From positions 27,342,001 to 27,406,000 of the forward strand of contig NC_047033.1 of the NCBI RefSeq assembly GCF_902652985.1: a DNA stretch of 64,000 bases, written 5' to 3'. Made by a program: the position numbers and the translations under genes. Positions within the stretch are counted from its first letter, which is position 1, and every line of letters starts with the position of its first letter. The notes under the pieces are model-generated. The model saw only the letters and a program-made list of their open reading frames with translations. It made no database searches and was not told where the DNA came from. This stretch comes from Pecten maximus. Its lineage: Eukaryota. Shown here one piece after another: positions 25,537-46,730 of the stretch.

Positions 25537-25890
25537 AACTTACAACATACTCAAACACAAATACAATTATACTTACAACATACTCCAACACAAATAAAAT
25601 CACACTTACAACATACTCCAACACAAATACAATTATACTTACAACATACTCAAACACAAATACAATTATACTTACAACATACTCAAACACAAATACAATT
25701 ATACTTACAACATACTCAAACACAAATACAATTATACTTACAACATACTCAAACACAAATACAATTATACTTACAACATACTCAAACACAAATACAATTA
25801 TACTTACAACATACTCAAACACAAATACAATTATACTTACAACATACTCAAACACAAATACAATTATACTTACAACATACTCAAACACAA
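25537..25890 (-). repeat. 33-bp array (11 copies) containing the exon 8 donor
   Basis: Minus-strand unit TTTGTGTTTGAGTATGTT|gtaagtataattgta. Confidence 0.95.
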
Positions 25891-25968
25891 AAGTTAGCGT
25901 TTCCTTGGTGTGTATGATGTCATGAAGTGTGACAATGTTAGCGTGTTTTAGACCCTTCAGAAGTGAGG
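25874..25968 (-). CDS. CDK14: CDK14 exon 8 ([32 protein letters not shown])
   Basis: Acceptor tttttcag|, donor GTT|gtaagt. Confidence 0.95.
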
Positions 25969-28800: not shown

Positions 28801-29509
28801 CTTCTGACGTTTGGGGGGATTTAGCTCTTGAAATGCTTTATCAATACATCTTATGATCCTGACAAGATAAATGAAGAATGCTACTACAGAAAGTTGGACG
28901 GTGAAGGACAAGATCTCAGAAGTGTGTCAGCATTCATAACTTTTGATTCCCTTTGGCTCTGTATCCTGCTGTCTAAATTAATGGTTCTGTAATTTGGTTG
29001 AATATAACATTGATGTGAAATCAAATCAGCTGCTTGGGCTCCATCCTTTCCTACTTCAGGAGAGACACCATTTGTACAAATGTATTAATTTTGATTTCCA
29101 TACTCAAAACATGCTGCCACATAAGGTTGATATATCTGCTTTGTACTTTTGTACGTTGTTTAATGCAAAAGTTGATGGATGACAGCTAGCTAGAAGAGGC
29201 ACTACACCATTTAATACATGACATAATAGAAGAGGCTCTACACCATTTAATACATGACATGACAGAAGAGGCTCCACACCATTTAATACATGACATGACA
29301 GAAGAGGCACTACACCATTTAATACATGACTTATCTCCTTAACCAGTGAGAAACTTTGTTTCTTTTTTTTCTTTTTTTTTCTCGACACGGTTTTCCCTGC
29401 CGTTTTCATGATAGTGAAAAAATATACTGGTAAACAGTGCAATGAACATATTGTCTCGCTGTGAAATCAACCATTAACAAATATAGACATAATTGGTGAA
29501 TATTTCATT

Positions 29510-29639
29510 ATCACAGCTCTCTATCCATGGCTACATATCTAATACACTTACCAACTAAACCCTTTGTAGACAGTATCACAGCTCTCTATCAATGGCTACA
29601 TATCTAATACACTTACCAACTAAACCCTTTGTAGACAGT
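29510..29639 (-). repeat. 65-bp direct duplication spanning the exon 6 donor
   Basis: ACTGTCTACAAAGGGTTTAGTTG|gtaagtgtattag occurs twice (GT at 29616 and 29551). Confidence 0.92.
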
Positions 29640-29708
29640 TGCATAGCTCCCCTCACCGAGCTGTTCCAACTTTTGGTAAGAATCAGCCTTCCCGAACGGT
29701 GAATTCCC
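29617..29708 (-). CDS. CDK14: CDK14 exon 6 (GNSPFGKADSYQKLEQLGEGSYATVYKGFS; Gly-rich loop)
   Basis: Acceptor tctttccag|, donor TTG|gtaagt; kinase subdomain I. Confidence 0.95.
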
Positions 29709-30545: not shown

Positions 30546-31284
30546 GCTCTTTGCACAGGAAGCATTAAAATTTCCTTAATTGTGATGGCGCTTAGCCTAG
30601 TACTAACTTTTACTCTTATTGACTATTTCTATAGAAATTATACAGAAGGGCCAATACTTTGTAGTGCTAATCTGTTATGTGGAGATTTGAGATCTCCAAA
30701 AATAATCTGTTTACAGTAATAATTACCAATATGTTGTTTAACAACTTGTGTTAATTTTTTGCTTCCAAAAATGAGTACGGTATTTATCTGCAATTAATCA
30801 CCTTCTCACAAATAAGCCCCCTTCTTCAATTTTAAAATAGTTGGCTCAAAATGGCCACATAGTTGATACATATCAAAACTACTAAACAGAACTTTTACAC
30901 TTATTTTTCCATGTTTGTCACAGCTAAAACTAGCTCATGGTTATTAAATTTCCTGCAGTATCACATTGTAACTGTTATCAGCGACAATAATATATACTTG
31001 TGTGTATACAGTGCATTCCGCTTAATCGGGTTGCCTATTTGCGGAGACTTTTTACCCGATTAACCGACTTATACAATAAGCCGAAATGCACGTGGCCATC
31101 TTGGATTTGGTCCGTAATGGTTGTCAGACTTGGGTCGATTTTGGATGAAAATATTTGCGTTATTATTGTTAATAAACAGTGTTTTTGTTTGTGCTTTTAC
31201 TGAATGTCAAATTGTCAGATTACTATTACTAATTGTATCAAAATACATGTACATGTATACAAATATATATTAAATGGATGCGTA

Positions 31285-31366
31285 TACCGTATATGACCTA
31301 ATAAGGGCACCCCCATGCATTTATCAATTACCCGCACCCTGCGCCCTTATTAGGTCGTATACGGTA
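31285..31366. mobile_element. 82-bp MITE (TA-flanked, Tc1/pogo-like ends)
   Basis: taccgtatatgacctaataagggc ... gcccttattaggtcgtatacggta. Confidence 0.7.
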
Positions 31367-31528
31367 TATAAATATTGGTGGAGTATCCATTTTCACACTA
31401 ATTTTTAATGGACCAAGAATATTACCAGCTAAACAGTATATGGAAGAAGCGATTTCACAAAAGTTTTGCTAATTCTTATTTACATGAAAAGTTTTGTAAT
31501 CACTGTTGATAGGACAGGCGATACATAC

Positions 31529-31692
31529 TCCGTAACTAGATGTTCGTTTCGGAGAGAACTGTCGTAGATATGTATGACCCTCAGACTTAGGTCGTTCATG
31601 TTTTTCATTATCAGGCGGTGAGTCAAGATCAAATGTTCCGTCAAGCATATCCCCAGCTGAATGATGCCGCTTTACTGGAGCATGGTTCTTAT
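31529..31692 (-). CDS. CDK14: CDK14 exon 5 (NKNHAPVKRHHSAGD...KRTSSYG)
   Basis: Acceptor tttttgacag|, donor GGA|gtatgt; phase 1/0. Confidence 0.8.
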
Positions 31693-33213
31693 CTGTCAAA
31701 AACAAATCATGGTTCTTATCTGTAAAGAACAACACATCATGGTTCTTATCTGTCAAAAACAACGGATCATGGTTCTTATCTGTCAAAAACAACAAAGCAT
31801 GATTCTTATCTGTCAAAAACAACAGATCATGGTTCTTTGTCAAAAACAACAGAGCATGGTTCTTATCTGTCAAAAACAACAGATCATGGTTCTTATCTGT
31901 CAAAAACAACAGAGCATGGTTCTTATCTGTCAAAAACAACAGAGCATGGTTCTTATCTGTCAAAAACAACAAAGCATGGTTCTTATCAGTCAAAAATAAT
32001 GGATCATGGTTCTTATCTGTCAAAAACAACAGATCATGGTTCTTATCTGTCAAAAACAACAGAGCATGGTTCTTATCTGTCAAGAACAACAGATCATGGT
32101 TCTTATCTGTCAAAAACAACAGAGCATGGTTCTTATCTGTCAAAAACAACAAAGCATGGTTCTTATCAGTCAAAAATAATGGATCATGGTTCTTATCTGT
32201 CAAAAACAACAGATCATGGTTCTTATCTGTCAAAAACAACAGAGCATGGTTCTTATCTGTCAAGAACAACAGATCATGGTTCTTATCTGTCAAAAACAAC
32301 AGAGCATGGTTCTTATCTGTCAAAAACAACAAAGCATGGTTCTAATCAGTCAAAAATAATGGATCATGGTTCTTATCTGTCAAAAACAACAGATCATGGT
32401 TCTTATCTGTCAAAAACAACAGAGCATGGTTCTTATCTGTCAAGAACAACAGATCATGGTTCTTTGTCAAAAACAACAGATCATGGTTCTTATCTGTCAA
32501 AAACAACAGATCATGGTTCTTATCTGTCAAAAACAACAGAGCATGGTTCTTATCTGTTAAAAACAACAGAGCATGGTTCTTATCTGTCAAAAACAACACA
32601 ACATATTGGTTCTTATCTCTCAAAAACATCAGAGCATGTTTCAGAGCATGTTTTTATTTGTCAAAAACAGAGTTTTTATGTTTTTTTATCAGCAAAAAAC
32701 AACACAACAAGCTTATGGTACTTATTTGCCAAAAACAAAGAATGGCACTTATCTGTCGATAATAGCAGATCATTGCTCTTACCTATCAAAAACAACAGAT
32801 CAACGTTCTTATCTCTTAAAAACAACAGATCATGGTTCTTATCTGTCAAAAACAACAGATCATGGTTCTTATCTGTCAAAAACAACAAATCATGGTTCTT
32901 ATCTGTCAAAAATAATAGATCATGGTTCTTATCTGTCAAAAACAACAAATCATGGTTCTTATCTGTCAAAAACAACACATCATGGTTCTTATCTGTCAAA
33001 AACAACAGAGCATGGTTCTTATCTGTCAAAAACAACAGATCATGGTTCTTATCTGTCAAAAACAACAGATCATGGTTCTTATCTGTCAAAAACAACAGAT
33101 CATGGTTCTTATCTGTCAAAAACAACAGATCATGGTTCTTATCTCTCAAAAACAACAGATCATGGTTCTTATCTCTCAAAAACAACAGATCATGGTTCTT
33201 GTCTCTCAAAAAC
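31679..33213 (-). repeat. 30-bp array (about 50 copies) containing the exon 5 acceptor; fills almost all of intron 4
   Basis: Minus-strand unit tgttgtttttgacag|ATAAGAACCATGATC. Confidence 0.95.
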
Positions 33214-33268
33214 TAGGGGTATAGATTTTAACACAAACAACAGTGATTTTATCATAAGAAGTTCATAC

Positions 33269-33458
33269 TTGTGAGGCGGTGTACCACGGTAGGCCTGCCT
33301 AGGGTGTGGTATCCGCCAGTGTGTCGGTTAGCTGGGTTGATCCCATTCGGCCCTTCATAATCGTCCTTATGGGAACAGCGCTGGAGAGTGAGATTGGCCC
33401 CAGGGTAGCCTCGCACACCGTCGGGGGAGACACCATTCACAAGACCCTCCTGTTCTGA
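33269..33458 (-). CDS. CDK14: CDK14 exon 4 (SEQEGLVNG...VVHRLT)
   Basis: Acceptor ttgtttacag|, donor CAA|gtatga; 190 nt, phase 0/1. Confidence 0.75.
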
Positions 33459-33582: not shown

Positions 33583-34430
33583 ACCTTACTGATTACTTGG
33601 TCTCGCCCACCTTAATCTTAATCTTAGGTTAGCCCCACCTTACTGATTACTTGGTCACGCCCACCTTAATCTTAGGTTAGCCCCACCTTACTGATTGCCT
33701 GGCCACGCCCACCTTAATCTTAGGTTAGCCCCACCTTACTGATTACTTGGTCACGCCCACCTTAACCTTAGGTTAGCCCCACCTTACTGATTACTTGGTC
33801 ACGCCCACCTTAACCTTAGGTTAGCCCCACCTTACTGATTACTTGGTCACGCCCACCTTAACCTTAGGTTAGCCCCACCTTACTGATTACTTGGTCACGC
33901 CCACCTTAACCTTAGGTTAGCCCCACCTTACTGATTACTTGGTCACACCCACCTTAATCTTAGGTTAGCCCCACCTTACTGATTGCCTGGCCACGCCCAC
34001 CTTAATCTTAGGTTAGCCCCACCTTACTGATTACCTGGACACGCCCATCTTAACCTTATGTGAACCTCACCTTACTGATTACTTGGTCACGCCCACCTTA
34101 ACCTTAGGTTAGCCCCACCTTACTGATAACCTGGCCACGCCCACCTTAACCTTATGTGAACCCCACCTTACTGATAACCTGGCCACGCCCACCTTAATCT
34201 TAGGTTAGCCCCACCTTACTGATTGCCTGGCCACGCCCACCTTAATCTTAGGTTAGCCCCACCTTACTGATTACTTGGTCACGCCCATCTTAACCTTATG
34301 TGAACCCCACCTTACTGATAACCTGGCCACGCCCACCTTAACCTTAGGTTAGCCCAACCTTACTGATTACTTGCCCCCCCCCCCCCTCCCCCACACCCCC
34401 ACCTTACTGATTACTTGGCCACGCCCACTG
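33583..34430 (-). repeat. 48-bp array just downstream of the exon 3 donor
   Basis: Unit ccttactgattacttggtcacgcccaccttaaccttaggttagcccca. Confidence 0.93.
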
Positions 34431-34450
34431 CCCACTGACAAGCTACTCAC

Positions 34451-34491
34451 CTCCTGGTCACTCTCATGTATAGTGTCCTCTTTGGTAATGG
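34451..34491 (-). CDS. CDK14: CDK14 exon 3 (SITKEDTIHESDQE)
   Basis: Acceptor ctttcag|, donor GAG|gtgagt; phases 1/0 fit the neighbouring exons. Confidence 0.75.
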
Positions 34492-45369: not shown

Positions 45370-46730
45370 TTGAGGATACTTACACAGACGTCCAAAGCTG
45401 ACCGATATTGAGGATACTTACAGAGACGTCCAAAGCTGGTCTATATTGAGGATACTTACACAGACGTCCAAAGCTGGTCGATATTGAGGATACTTACAGA
45501 GACGTCCAAAGCTGGCCGATATTGAGGATACTTACACAGACGTCCAAAGCTGGCCGATATTGAGGATACTTACACAGACGTCCAAAGCTGGCCGATATTG
45601 AGGATACTTACACAGACGTCCAAAGCTGACCGATATTGAGGATACTTACAGAGACGTCCAAAGCTGGCCGATATTGAGGATACTTACAGACGTCCAAAGC
45701 TGACCGATATTGAGGATACTTACAGAGACGTCCAAAGCTGGCCGATATTGAGGAAACTTACAGACGTCCAAAGCTGGCCGATATTGAGGATACTTACAGA
45801 GACGTCCAAAGCTGGCCGATATTGAGGATACTTACAGACATGTCCAAAGCTGGCCGATATTGAGGATACTTACAGAGACGTCCAAAGCTGGCCGATATTG
45901 AGGATACTTACAGAGACGTCCAAAGCTGGTCGATATTGAGGATACTTACAGAGACGTCCAAAGCTGGCCGATATTGAGGATACTTACAGACACGTCCAAA
46001 GCTGGCCGATATTGAGGATACTTACAGAGACGTCCAAAGCTGGCCGATATTGAGGATACTTACAGACGTCCAAAGCTGGCTGATATTGAGGATACTTCCA
46101 GAGCGTCCAAAGCTGCCGATATTGAGGATACTTACAGAGACGTCCAAAGCTGGCCGATATTGAGGATACTTACAGACATGTCCAAAGCTGGCCGATATTG
46201 AGGATACTTACAGAGACGTCCAAAGCTGGCCGATATTGAGGATACTTACAGAGACGTCCAAAGCTGGTCGATATTGAGGATACTTACAGAGACGTCCAAA
46301 GCTGGCCGATATTGAGGATACTTACAGACACGTCCAAAGCTGGCCGATATTGAGGATACTTACAGAGACGTCCAAAGCTGGCCGATATTGAGGATACTTA
46401 CACAGACGTCCAAAGCTGGCTGATATTGAGGATACTTACAGAGACGTCCAAAGCTGACAGATACTGAGGATACTTACAGAGACGTCCAAAGCTGGCCGTA
46501 TTGAGGATACTTACACAGACGTCCAAAGCTGGCCGATATTGAGGATACTTACAGAGACGTCCAAAGCTGACCGATACTGAGGATACTTACAGAGACGTCC
46601 AAAGCTGGCCGATATTGAGGATACTTACACAGACGTCCAAAGCTGGCCGATATTGAGGATACTTACAGAGACGTCCAAAGCTGGTCGATATTGAGGATAC
46701 TTACAGAGACGTCCAAAGCTGGCCGATATT
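45370..46730 (-). repeat. 38-bp array (about 36 copies) containing the exon 2 donor
   Basis: Minus-strand unit ATATCGGCCAGCTTTGGACGTCTCT|gtaagtatcctca. Confidence 0.96.

What the first reader, a model, noticed from the sequence alone, without database searches (positions are those of the whole stretch)
31679..33213. An intron made almost entirely of about 50 copies of its own 3' splice site, in frame with the next exon
CDK14 intron 4 (31693-33268) is nearly all (tgttgtttttgacag|ATAAGAACCATGATC)n. The unit is 30 nt. The length variants in the exon-proximal about 21 copies are 3-nt deletions, so the frame stays open from about 32340 into exon 5 (ORF 31469..32332). Each upstream AG there would add DKNHDLLFLT-type units to the N-terminal extension rather than break the kinase. 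Copies nearest the donor have degraded cag to gag. Inference: a possible ladder of N-terminal length isoforms, or a very strict last-AG selection.
Basis: partly seen in the sequence, partly recalled or inferred. Interest (0 to 1): 0.8.

Follow-up and report, generated by a model that had tools for sequence, protein, structure and literature searches.

The report
Splice-acceptor minisatellite filling a scallop intron
Intron 4 of the king scallop CDK14 gene is almost entirely 49 tandem copies of its own intron/exon-5 junction, yet the mRNA uses only the last copy, so this is an extreme example of a known repeat type ("mirage" minisatellite), not a ladder of protein isoforms.

Summary
Window 31693-33213 holds 49 head-to-tail units of 30 nt. 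They fill 96% of intron 4 (31693-33268) of a minus-strand CDK14 orthologue, and 42 of them keep the AG. The genome matches Pecten maximus xPecMax1.

Each unit is 15 nt of intron tail (pyrimidine tract, TTGAC, CAG) plus 12-15 nt of the exon-5 head. Pearl oyster and ark clam have the same intron position and phase and the same exon head (KNHAPVKRHH), but an ordinary unique acceptor. So the array is a scallop-lineage amplification of the ancestral junction. The unit is unique to this locus in 918 Mb.

Transcript contigs from four runs in four studies leave the genome exactly at the last AG and continue into exon 6. Only one run has faint contigs running from exon 5 into the repeat. No database protein carries the DKNHDLLFLT unit. 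The open frame is a by-product: an antisense frame is open for longer, and only 3 of 90 substitutions would make a stop.

The isoform ladder is therefore not supported. Strict use of the last AG is supported, at contig-level sensitivity.

The class is published: amphioxus "mirages", and the human F7, IFI6 and CBS donor repeats. First readers of this scan noted the same pattern on other DNA of this genome. My unbiased samples show only about a 2.4-fold excess.

The parts
33269..33458 (-). Exon 4 of the CDK14 orthologue. It ends ...CTCACAA; its last A is codon position 1.
   Evidence: tblastn of bivalve CDK14 proteins; boundary sequence; donor GT at 33268-33267
31693..33268 (-). Intron 4 (1576 nt, phase 1), about 96% array-derived
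   Evidence: The same intron position and phase occur in the Pinctada and Tegillarca orthologues.
33214..33268 (-). Donor-side leader of 55 nt: GTATGA donor plus a stretch that looks like one more, very decayed unit
   Evidence: sequence reading; the decayed-unit reading is inference
32783..33213 (-). Block A: about 14 clean 30-nt units, mostly the ATGATC variant. The first three have GAG instead of CAG. They are out of frame with exon 5 because of the core.
32617..32782 (-). Degenerate core (units of 30, 27, 46 and 63 nt) separating the two blocks. It shifts the frame.
31693..32616 (-). Block B: 31 units adjoining exon 5, all of 3n length. It has one in-frame TAG (32344-32342); the last 21 units are in frame and stop-free with exon 5.
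31840..32376 (-). Higher-order repeat: three copies of a 180-nt (6-unit) block at 98-99% identity, showing recent unequal exchange
31693..31694 (-). The AG that is actually used (authentic 3' splice site, last of the series)
   Evidence: Contigs of X1, X3, X7 and X9 end their match at 31692-31696.
31529..31692 (-). Exon 5 (164 nt), reading (N)KNHAPVKRHHSAGDML...SSYG. Its first 12-15 nt are what every unit copies.
   Evidence: contigs match 31528-31692, and the loose end is the exon-6 start; orthologues
29617..29708 (-). Exon 6 (start of the kinase domain, GEGSYATVYKG). It is joined to exon 5 in the contigs.

Best explanation
This is an acceptor-side 'mirage' minisatellite. A 30-bp segment spanning the ancestral intron-4/exon-5 junction of the scallop CDK14 gene was duplicated in tandem. 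That segment is 15 nt of intron tail (pyrimidine tract, a TTGAC branch-like motif and CAG) plus the first 12-15 nt of the exon. Unequal exchange or replication slippage then amplified it to 49 units, which now make up nearly the whole intron.

The array is intronic DNA. The spliceosome joins exon 4 to the exon-proximal, authentic AG at 31693/31692, and the 41 upstream AG-bearing copies stay silent pseudo-acceptors. The open frame through the last 21 copies follows from a 3n unit that happens to lack stops; it is not a sign of coding.

Shown: the anatomy, locus specificity, ancestral junction and dominant use of the last AG.

Inferred: why the last AG wins. The most likely reason is exon definition. 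U2AF and U2 would be recruited to the acceptor nearest the real exon body and its donor 164 nt downstream. The U-rich unit sequence that would become 'exon' after any upstream AG would act as intronic context. This mirrors the exon-proximal choice shown experimentally for repeated donors in human F7.
For: Array anatomy.

Locus specificity: a 180-nt query and a 27-nt junction pattern with up to 3 mismatches hit only this intron in 918 Mb (38 hits for the pattern, all here).

Ancestral junction: the Tegillarca and Pinctada proteins read KNHAPVKRHHSAGDML. Their loci have the same phase-1 intron position, the exon head ..AAAAACCATGCACC.. and unique, non-repeated acceptors. Their introns are about 0.31 kb and 1.86 kb and carry no such array.

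Splicing: the exon-5 contigs of four runs from four studies match 31528-31692/31696. The downstream loose end equals the exon-6 start. There is no depth in the repeat in X3, X7 or X9.

No coding use: no protein carries the unit peptide in two word searches of 5.8 billion proteins.

Frame controls: an antisense frame is open for 496 codons, and only 3 of 90 substitutions create a stop.

Class precedent: boundary-spanning tandem repeats that leave splicing regular, in amphioxus (PMC3087553) and in human F7, LMNB2 and PDGF (PMC1557585).
Against: The RNA evidence is assembled contigs, not raw reads. Contigs drop rare variants and cannot quantify. Only X9 is on record as RNA; the kind of X1, X3 and X7 is a guess.

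In X1 the exon contig ends exactly at 31692, which indicates a branch in the assembly graph. A 76-nt contig (depth 2, against 9.7 for the exon) crosses from exon 5 into the repeat, while the unique flank of intron 5 has no depth. Some retention of intron 4, or use of an upstream AG, in that sample is therefore not excluded.

Use of AGs upstream of the in-frame TAG, or in block A, would give premature stops. Nonsense-mediated decay could hide such transcripts.

It is inferred from the 4-nt overhang and from the orthologue alignment. The exon-definition mechanism is untested.
Confidence: 0.8

Rival explanations
1. Isoform ladder. A minority of transcripts, perhaps limited to some tissue or stage, use one of the 21 in-frame upstream AGs. 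This would insert 9-10-residue DKNHDLLFLT-type units into the N-terminal extension of CDK14, much as the two proximal pseudo-donors of the human IFI6 (6-16) minisatellite are used.
For: The geometry allows it: 21 stop-free in-frame units, each with a pyrimidine tract, a yUnAy motif and AG. In run X1 the exon contig breaks at 31692, and a depth-2 contig bridges 31663-31734 with no matching depth in the intron-5 flank. The IFI6 and CBS precedents are in PMC1557585.
Against: There are no such contigs in X3, X7 or X9, although the exon depth is 37 and 41 in two of them. The X1 bridging contig runs past the nearest upstream AG, so it is not the +27-nt form. Repeat k-mers pool about 45 copies, so depth 2-5 fits trace pre-mRNA or DNA. 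No protein with the unit was found in two searches. The open frame has a trivial explanation.
Confidence: 0.1
2. Regulatory decoy. The array is kept because its roughly 40 pseudo-acceptors and GU/U-rich tracts soak up U2AF or GU-binding proteins, or slow the removal of intron 4, and so tune CDK14 output.
For: Most copies keep intact signals (42 of 49 with AG). The higher-order repeat is 98-99% identical. There is possible asymmetric retention of intron 4 in X1.
Against: High identity is what recent unequal exchange produces without any selection. Copies decay at the donor end and in the core (CAG to GAG, CTG, CAA). The array is absent in the pearl oyster and ark clam orthologues. The array RNA has no structure beyond chance (z = -0.49). 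Similar arrays sit at many other junctions, and most arrays in this gene have no splice signals at all.
Confidence: 0.07
3. Assembly artefact. The copy number or arrangement of the array is an error of long-read assembly.
For: Long arrays with higher-order repeats are hard to assemble. Copy number could not be checked, because the reads tool does not take long repeats.
Against: Independent short contigs of run X1 reproduce the exon-proximal units and the exon/repeat junction, differing only by a 3-nt indel. The window has no N, and dozens of other arrays with the same texture. The published assembly is PacBio-based and curated (PMC7191990).
Confidence: 0.03

Closest known systems
Amphioxus 'mirage' minisatellites (Adh3; globin genes BflGb6 and BflGb9)
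   Same: They are tandem repeats whose unit spans an exon-intron boundary and lie in the intron next to the authentic junction. Both acceptor-side (BflGb6: intron 3' end plus exon 5' part) and donor-side cases exist. Many copies keep AG/GT yet regular splicing is undisturbed. They show concerted evolution and length instability (PMC3087553).
   Different: This case is in a mollusc, not a cephalochordate. The unit is 30 nt against 150-160 nt in BflGb6 (10-72 nt in Adh3). There are 49 copies against 3-6. The array fills essentially the whole intron, and 21 copies are in frame with the exon. Somatic instability was not tested here.
Human F7 intron 7 37-bp VNTR and the other donor-side boundary minisatellites (IFI6/6-16, CBS, LMNB2, PDGF)
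   Same: The first or last unit spans the exon-intron boundary, so the authentic splice site is reiterated many times. In F7, LMNB2 and PDGF only the exon-proximal authentic site is used, although the pseudo-sites are competent (PMC1557585).
   Different: Those repeat 5' splice sites, with 5-26 copies. This one repeats a 3' splice site with its pyrimidine tract and branch-like motif, about 49 times. In IFI6 and CBS the two nearest pseudo-sites are used, which was not seen here.
Tandem (NAGNAG-type) alternative acceptors
   Same: They are closely spaced in-frame AGs that can add or remove codons.
   Different: NAGNAG sites are 3 nt apart, share one branch point and tract, and are commonly both used. 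Here the sites are 27-30 nt apart, each with its own signals, and only the last is seen in use.
Recursive splice (ratchet) sites
   Same: They are multiple internal 3' splice-site-like elements inside an intron.
   Different: A recursive site needs a 5' splice site regenerated right after the AG (AG|GTAAGT). Here the AG is followed by ATAAGA, with no GT (tested by reading), and the intron is only 1.6 kb.

Membership tests
Mirage / boundary-spanning minisatellite | Head-to-tail tandem array of a 10-200-bp unit | tested here: met
   TRF period 30, 85-91% matches; 49 units
Mirage / boundary-spanning minisatellite | The unit contains an exon end plus the adjoining splice site, and the authentic junction is the terminal unit | tested here: met
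   The unit is the intron tail ...TTGACAG plus the exon head ATAAGAACCATG(CTC). The exon head is ancestral: KNHAPV in three other bivalves, with the same intron position.
Mirage / boundary-spanning minisatellite | Locus-specific origin, not a dispersed repeat or transposon | tested here: met
   All 38 hits of the 27-nt junction pattern (up to 3 mismatches), and all hits of a 180-nt query, lie in this intron out of 918 Mb. A looser motif adds only one unrelated array.
Mirage / boundary-spanning minisatellite | Regular splicing at the authentic site despite reiterated signals | tested here: met
   Contigs of four runs from four studies use 31693/31692. This is contig-level only.
Mirage / boundary-spanning minisatellite | Length polymorphism or instability between alleles | tested here: inconclusive
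   One allele in X1 has +3 nt in the last unit. Copy-number variation could not be measured.
Alternative-acceptor ladder (IFI6-like use of pseudo-sites) | Mature transcripts that join the upstream exon to pseudo-sites | tested here: not met
   None in X3, X7 or X9. The X1 low-depth contigs are ambiguous. No protein carries the unit peptide.
Recursive splice site array | AG immediately followed by a GT donor consensus | tested here: not met
   AG is followed by ATAAGA in all units.
Coding tandem repeat (exon) | Frame conservation beyond chance, and presence in proteins | tested here: not met
   An antisense frame is more open than the sense frame, and 3 of 90 substitutions give a stop. The unit peptide is absent from the databases.

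The most novel reading that the evidence does not exclude
The array may not be inert. Under some condition not sampled here (a tissue, a stage, or the population seen faintly in run X1), the nearest in-frame pseudo-acceptors would be used, as in human IFI6 and CBS. That would give CDK14 variants with 9-10-residue inserts whose number can change by unequal exchange. More broadly, boundary-spanning minisatellites would be over-produced or preferentially kept at splice junctions in pteriomorph bivalves, as was suspected for amphioxus, pointing to a link between splice junctions and the birth of minisatellites.
Probability: 0.12. Interest if true: 0.6.

Novelty: new member of a known kind. Interest (0 to 1): 0.35.

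Why it matters
This is a natural competition experiment with 42 AG-bearing acceptors, near-identical in the two clean blocks, in one 1.6-kb intron. Only the exon-proximal one is seen in use. That makes it an unusually clean substrate for testing how 3' splice sites are chosen: exon definition, scanning from a branch point, or the proximity rule. It is the acceptor-side counterpart of the human F7 donor model.

It also extends 'mirage' minisatellites from amphioxus and a few human genes to a mollusc. The Pecten maximus genome paper does not contain the words 'tandem repeat', 'minisatellite' or 'satellite', although arrays make up 41% of this gene.

There is a practical point as well. Such arrays create long spurious ORFs and decoy splice sites that mislead gene predictors. 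The pearl oyster CDK14 model is garbled at one of its own arrays.

Tried and rejected
1. Dispersed repeat or transposon origin: rejected. All genome-wide hits lie in this intron. A resemblance to the L090 array (a myosin gene 1.6 Mb away) is limited to that one locus.

2. RNA hairpin over each AG (ATCTGT...ACAGAT): rejected. A 300-nt piece of the array folds no better than shuffles (z = -0.49).

3. Selection for an open frame: rejected on the controls.

4. Recursive splicing: rejected, because no GT follows the AG.

5. Genome-wide 'systematic seeding' of arrays at junctions, tested three ways.
- This gene: 5 of 33 arrays straddle exon ends, against 1.2-1.3 expected from random placement of the founding unit (P about 0.01). 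The window was pre-selected, however.
- An unbiased kinase-exon sample: 6 clear cases in 134 boundaries against 1.3 expected (P = 0.0025).
- A second unbiased sample of myosin exons: at most 1 in 76 boundaries against 1.4 expected.
- Pooled unbiased result: 6-7 against 2.75 expected, about 2.4-fold, P between 0.02 and 0.06. This is suggestive, not established.
- Orthologue loci: pearl oyster 3 of 8 arrays (about 1.5 expected by my hand estimate), ark clam 0 of 24.

6. Recovering the scallop's own CDK14 protein, or those of other scallops, by word search: not achieved. The length window of the tool (0.55-1.75 times the query) probably excludes them, so the age of the array within Pectinidae is unknown.

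Full report
**Observation**

The 30-nt array is real. Tandem Repeats Finder reports period 30 (also 60 and 90) over 31681-33213, with scores of 1512-2182. On the minus strand I cut it into 49 units between 33202 and 31693, plus a partial first unit from 33213. Lengths are 42x30, 4x27, and one each of 33, 46 and 63 nt.

Each unit is an intron tail (TGTTGTTTTTGACAG) followed by an exon head (ATAAGAACCATG, in many copies extended to ..CTC as in the exon). 42 of 49 units end in AG (37 CAG, 4 GAG, 1 TAG). 40 have a yUnAy motif (TTGAC) in their last 12 nt. The 15 nt before the AG are 72% pyrimidine.

The array is two clean blocks (33213-32783 and 32616-31693) around a decayed core (32782-32617). The exon-proximal block contains three copies of a 180-nt, six-unit higher-order repeat at 98-99% identity. 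That identity shows recent unequal exchange. Only 55 nt next to the donor lie outside the array, so about 96% of the intron is array.

**Gene context**

A word search with the ORF 31472-32332 (minus strand) found only bivalve CDK14 proteins, from Tegillarca, Pinctada, Mytilus and Patella. All matched the exon-5 part alone.

Mapping those proteins onto the window gives a 17-exon gene on the minus strand from 62471 to 17128. The array lies in intron 4. Exon 4 is 33458-33269, the donor GT is 33268-33267, exon 5 is 31692-31529 and exon 6 is 29708-29617. The junction codon is A|AT (Asn).

The exons were searched one at a time by reference. I built and searched no joined spliced model.

The assembly figures are 918,306,378 bp in 3,983 scaffolds, with scaffolds of 60,076,705, 44,824,366 and 32,483,354 bp. 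They are identical to those published for Pecten maximus (PMC7191990).

**Origin**

The orthologous proteins read ...KNHAPVKRHHSAGDML... in ark clam and pearl oyster (NSHAPV in mussel), so the exon head copied into each unit is ancestral.

The orthologous loci (L009 Pinctada, L010 Tegillarca) have the intron at the same position and phase. They have the same exon head (..AAAAACCATGCACC..) and an ordinary, unique acceptor. Their introns are about 1.86 kb and 0.31 kb and carry no such array.

The unit is locus-specific. A 180-nt query, and the 27-nt junction pattern with up to 3 mismatches, hit only this intron in the whole genome (38 hits for the pattern).

The array therefore arose in the scallop lineage by tandem duplication of a 30-bp piece spanning the existing junction. 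The alternatives, insertion of a repeat or recruitment of the exon start from a repeat, do not fit these results.

**What the RNA does**

All runs on offer were Logan contigs. The reads tool states that it turns away long repeats. I therefore laid four runs from four studies on 30550-31810, which is exon 5 plus the last four units.

In every run one long contig (340-2397 nt) matches 31528-31692 or 31528-31696. The downstream loose end is the start of exon 6, which fixes the exon-5 donor at 31529|31528. The 4-nt upstream overhang with one mismatch is what exon 4's ...ACAA gives against the intronic ...ACAG.

X3, X7 and X9 (exon depths 36.6, 41.1 and 4.6) have no depth at all in the repeat.

X1 differs. 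Its exon contig ends exactly at 31692, which indicates a branch in the assembly graph. A 76-nt contig of depth 2 bridges 31663-31734, with a 3-nt insertion that makes the last unit 30 nt, so it comes from another allele. A 60-nt contig of depth 5.4 lies at 31736-31794.

Repeat words pool about 45 copies, so this fits trace pre-mRNA or DNA. It does not exclude some retention of intron 4 or rare use of an upstream AG in that sample. Contigs cannot give rates.

Use of AGs beyond the in-frame TAG at 32344, or in block A, would create premature stops. Nonsense-mediated decay could hide such transcripts.

**The open frame**

The exon frame is indeed open for 217 codons (21 units). But an antisense frame is open for 496 codons across the array, and another for 217. 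In the exon frame only 3 of the 90 possible single substitutions in a unit create a stop.

The 3-nt length variants lie in the TGTTGT micro-repeat or recur as the same deletion in two places. One is simply polymorphic.

Two word searches of 5.8 billion proteins, with candidate lengths of 68-502 aa, found no protein with DKNHDLLFLT units. So nothing indicates that the copies are or were translated.

**Mechanism**

Shown: an array of competent-looking acceptors in which the exon-proximal one is used.

Inferred: exon definition. The acceptor next to the real exon body and its donor 164 nt downstream is the one stabilised. After any upstream AG, the would-be exon begins with another pyrimidine tract and AG, which is intron-like context. 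This parallels the exon-proximal choice shown by mutagenesis for the repeated donors of human F7 (PMC1557585).

I tested a structural explanation, a hairpin ATCTGT...ACAGAT over each AG, and dropped it because the fold is at chance level (z = -0.49). Recursive splicing is excluded because no GT follows the AG.

**Comparison with what is known**

Tandem repeats whose unit spans an exon-intron boundary are described.

- Amphioxus 'mirages' occur in Adh3 and in the globin genes. BflGb6 is an acceptor-side case with 3-6 units of 150-160 bp, and splicing there is regular. The authors thought the phenomenon possibly general in cephalochordates (PMC3087553).
- Human donor-side minisatellites occur in F7, IFI6/6-16, CBS, LMNB2 and PDGF. 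In IFI6 and CBS the two nearest pseudo-sites are also used (PMC1557585).

The present array meets the defining features of that class. It is an extreme member: an acceptor-side case with a 30-nt unit, 49 copies, filling the whole intron, in a mollusc.

My searches found no report from molluscs. The P. maximus genome paper never uses the words 'tandem repeat', 'minisatellite' or 'satellite'.

**Is junction seeding a rule in this genome?**

First readers of this scan noted the same pattern in many other windows of this genome.

In this gene, 33 arrays cover 41% of 45.6 kb. Five of them straddle exon ends: the E2 donor (38x36), the E5 acceptor (30x49), the E6 donor (65x2), the E8 donor (33x11) and the E13 acceptor (77x2). 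Random placement of the founding units predicts 1.2-1.3 (P about 0.01). This window was pre-selected, so I drew two samples without regard to repeats.

| Sample | Boundaries | Straddlers seen | Expected |
|---|---|---|---|
| 67 kinase exons | 134 | 6 clear, 2 marginal | 1.3 (P = 0.0025) |
| 38 myosin exons | 76 | at most 1 probable | 1.4 |
| Pooled | 210 | 6-7 | 2.75 |

In the kinase sample, one exon (locus L026) has such arrays at both ends. In the myosin sample, two arrays begin or end exactly at the junction.

The pooled excess is about 2.4-fold, with P between 0.02 and 0.06. The pearl oyster orthologue has three such arrays at other junctions (about 1.5 expected, by my hand estimate). The ark clam orthologue has none of 24.

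So these arrays are common and well tolerated in this genome. A real bias towards junctions is suggested but not established.

**Verdict**

The 'strict last AG' reading is supported and the 'isoform ladder' is not. The object is a new, extreme member of a known kind.

Noticed in passing
window 45370-46730, 29509-29639, 25533-25891, 21996-22153: Four more arrays of the same CDK14 gene have units that span an exon end plus its splice site: exon 2 donor (38 nt x36), exon 6 donor (65 nt x2), exon 8 donor (33 nt x11) and exon 13 acceptor (77 nt x2). Which copy is spliced was not checked with RNA.
   Followed up: partly
window 17000-62600: 33 distinct minisatellite arrays (periods 16-324 nt) cover 18.6 kb, or 41%, of the CDK14 gene span. 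This is far above the roughly 12-19% seen around random kinase and myosin exons of the same genome. The published repeat table lists only 0.99% 'simple repeats'.
   Followed up: partly
L009:15011-15489, L009:21418-22491, L009:6055-6195: The pearl oyster CDK14 orthologue has its own boundary-spanning arrays at different places: the exon-12 acceptor (114 nt x4), the stop-codon region (144 nt x7) and the exon-7 acceptor (66 nt x2). The deposited protein model P0002 is garbled just before GLARAKS, at the first of these.
   Followed up: partly
L026 (G000:C12:28893509-28895435): One kinase exon is flanked on both sides by arrays that copy its own ends: 51 nt x13.6 including the acceptor plus 10 nt of exon, and 45 nt x14 including 18 nt of exon plus the donor.
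   Followed up: partly
L090 (G000:C19:29017842-29019597), array at locus 374-780: A 32-nt x12.7 array ends exactly at the acceptor AG of a myosin exon. Its unit (..AACCATGA..TTGTTGTTTATGACAG) resembles the CDK14 unit. A genome scan shows these two arrays are the only places with that motif, so the resemblance is probably chance between two acceptor-derived units. This is not resolved.
   Followed up: partly
L086 (G000:C5:46328981-46331730), 969-1769: The intron of about 830 nt between two myosin exons is almost wholly one 22-nt x36 array. A 46-nt x17 array then starts 18 nt after the next donor.
   Followed up: no
window 31005-31370 (intron 5): Contigs at very high depth (up to about 10,900 in X7) from all four runs match this stretch at 90-95% identity, with loose ends on both sides. 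This is probably a dispersed, highly transcribed repeat (31300-31360 contains an inverted repeat). It is unrelated to CDK14 expression.
   Followed up: no
window 34373-34451: The 48-nt array 33583-34373 continues in decayed form up to the exon-3 donor. Its unit (..GTGACCAAGTAATCAGTAAGG..) loosely resembles the exon-3 tail plus donor (..GTGACCAGGAG|GTGAGTAG..), so it may be an old, diverged donor-side mirage.
   Followed up: no
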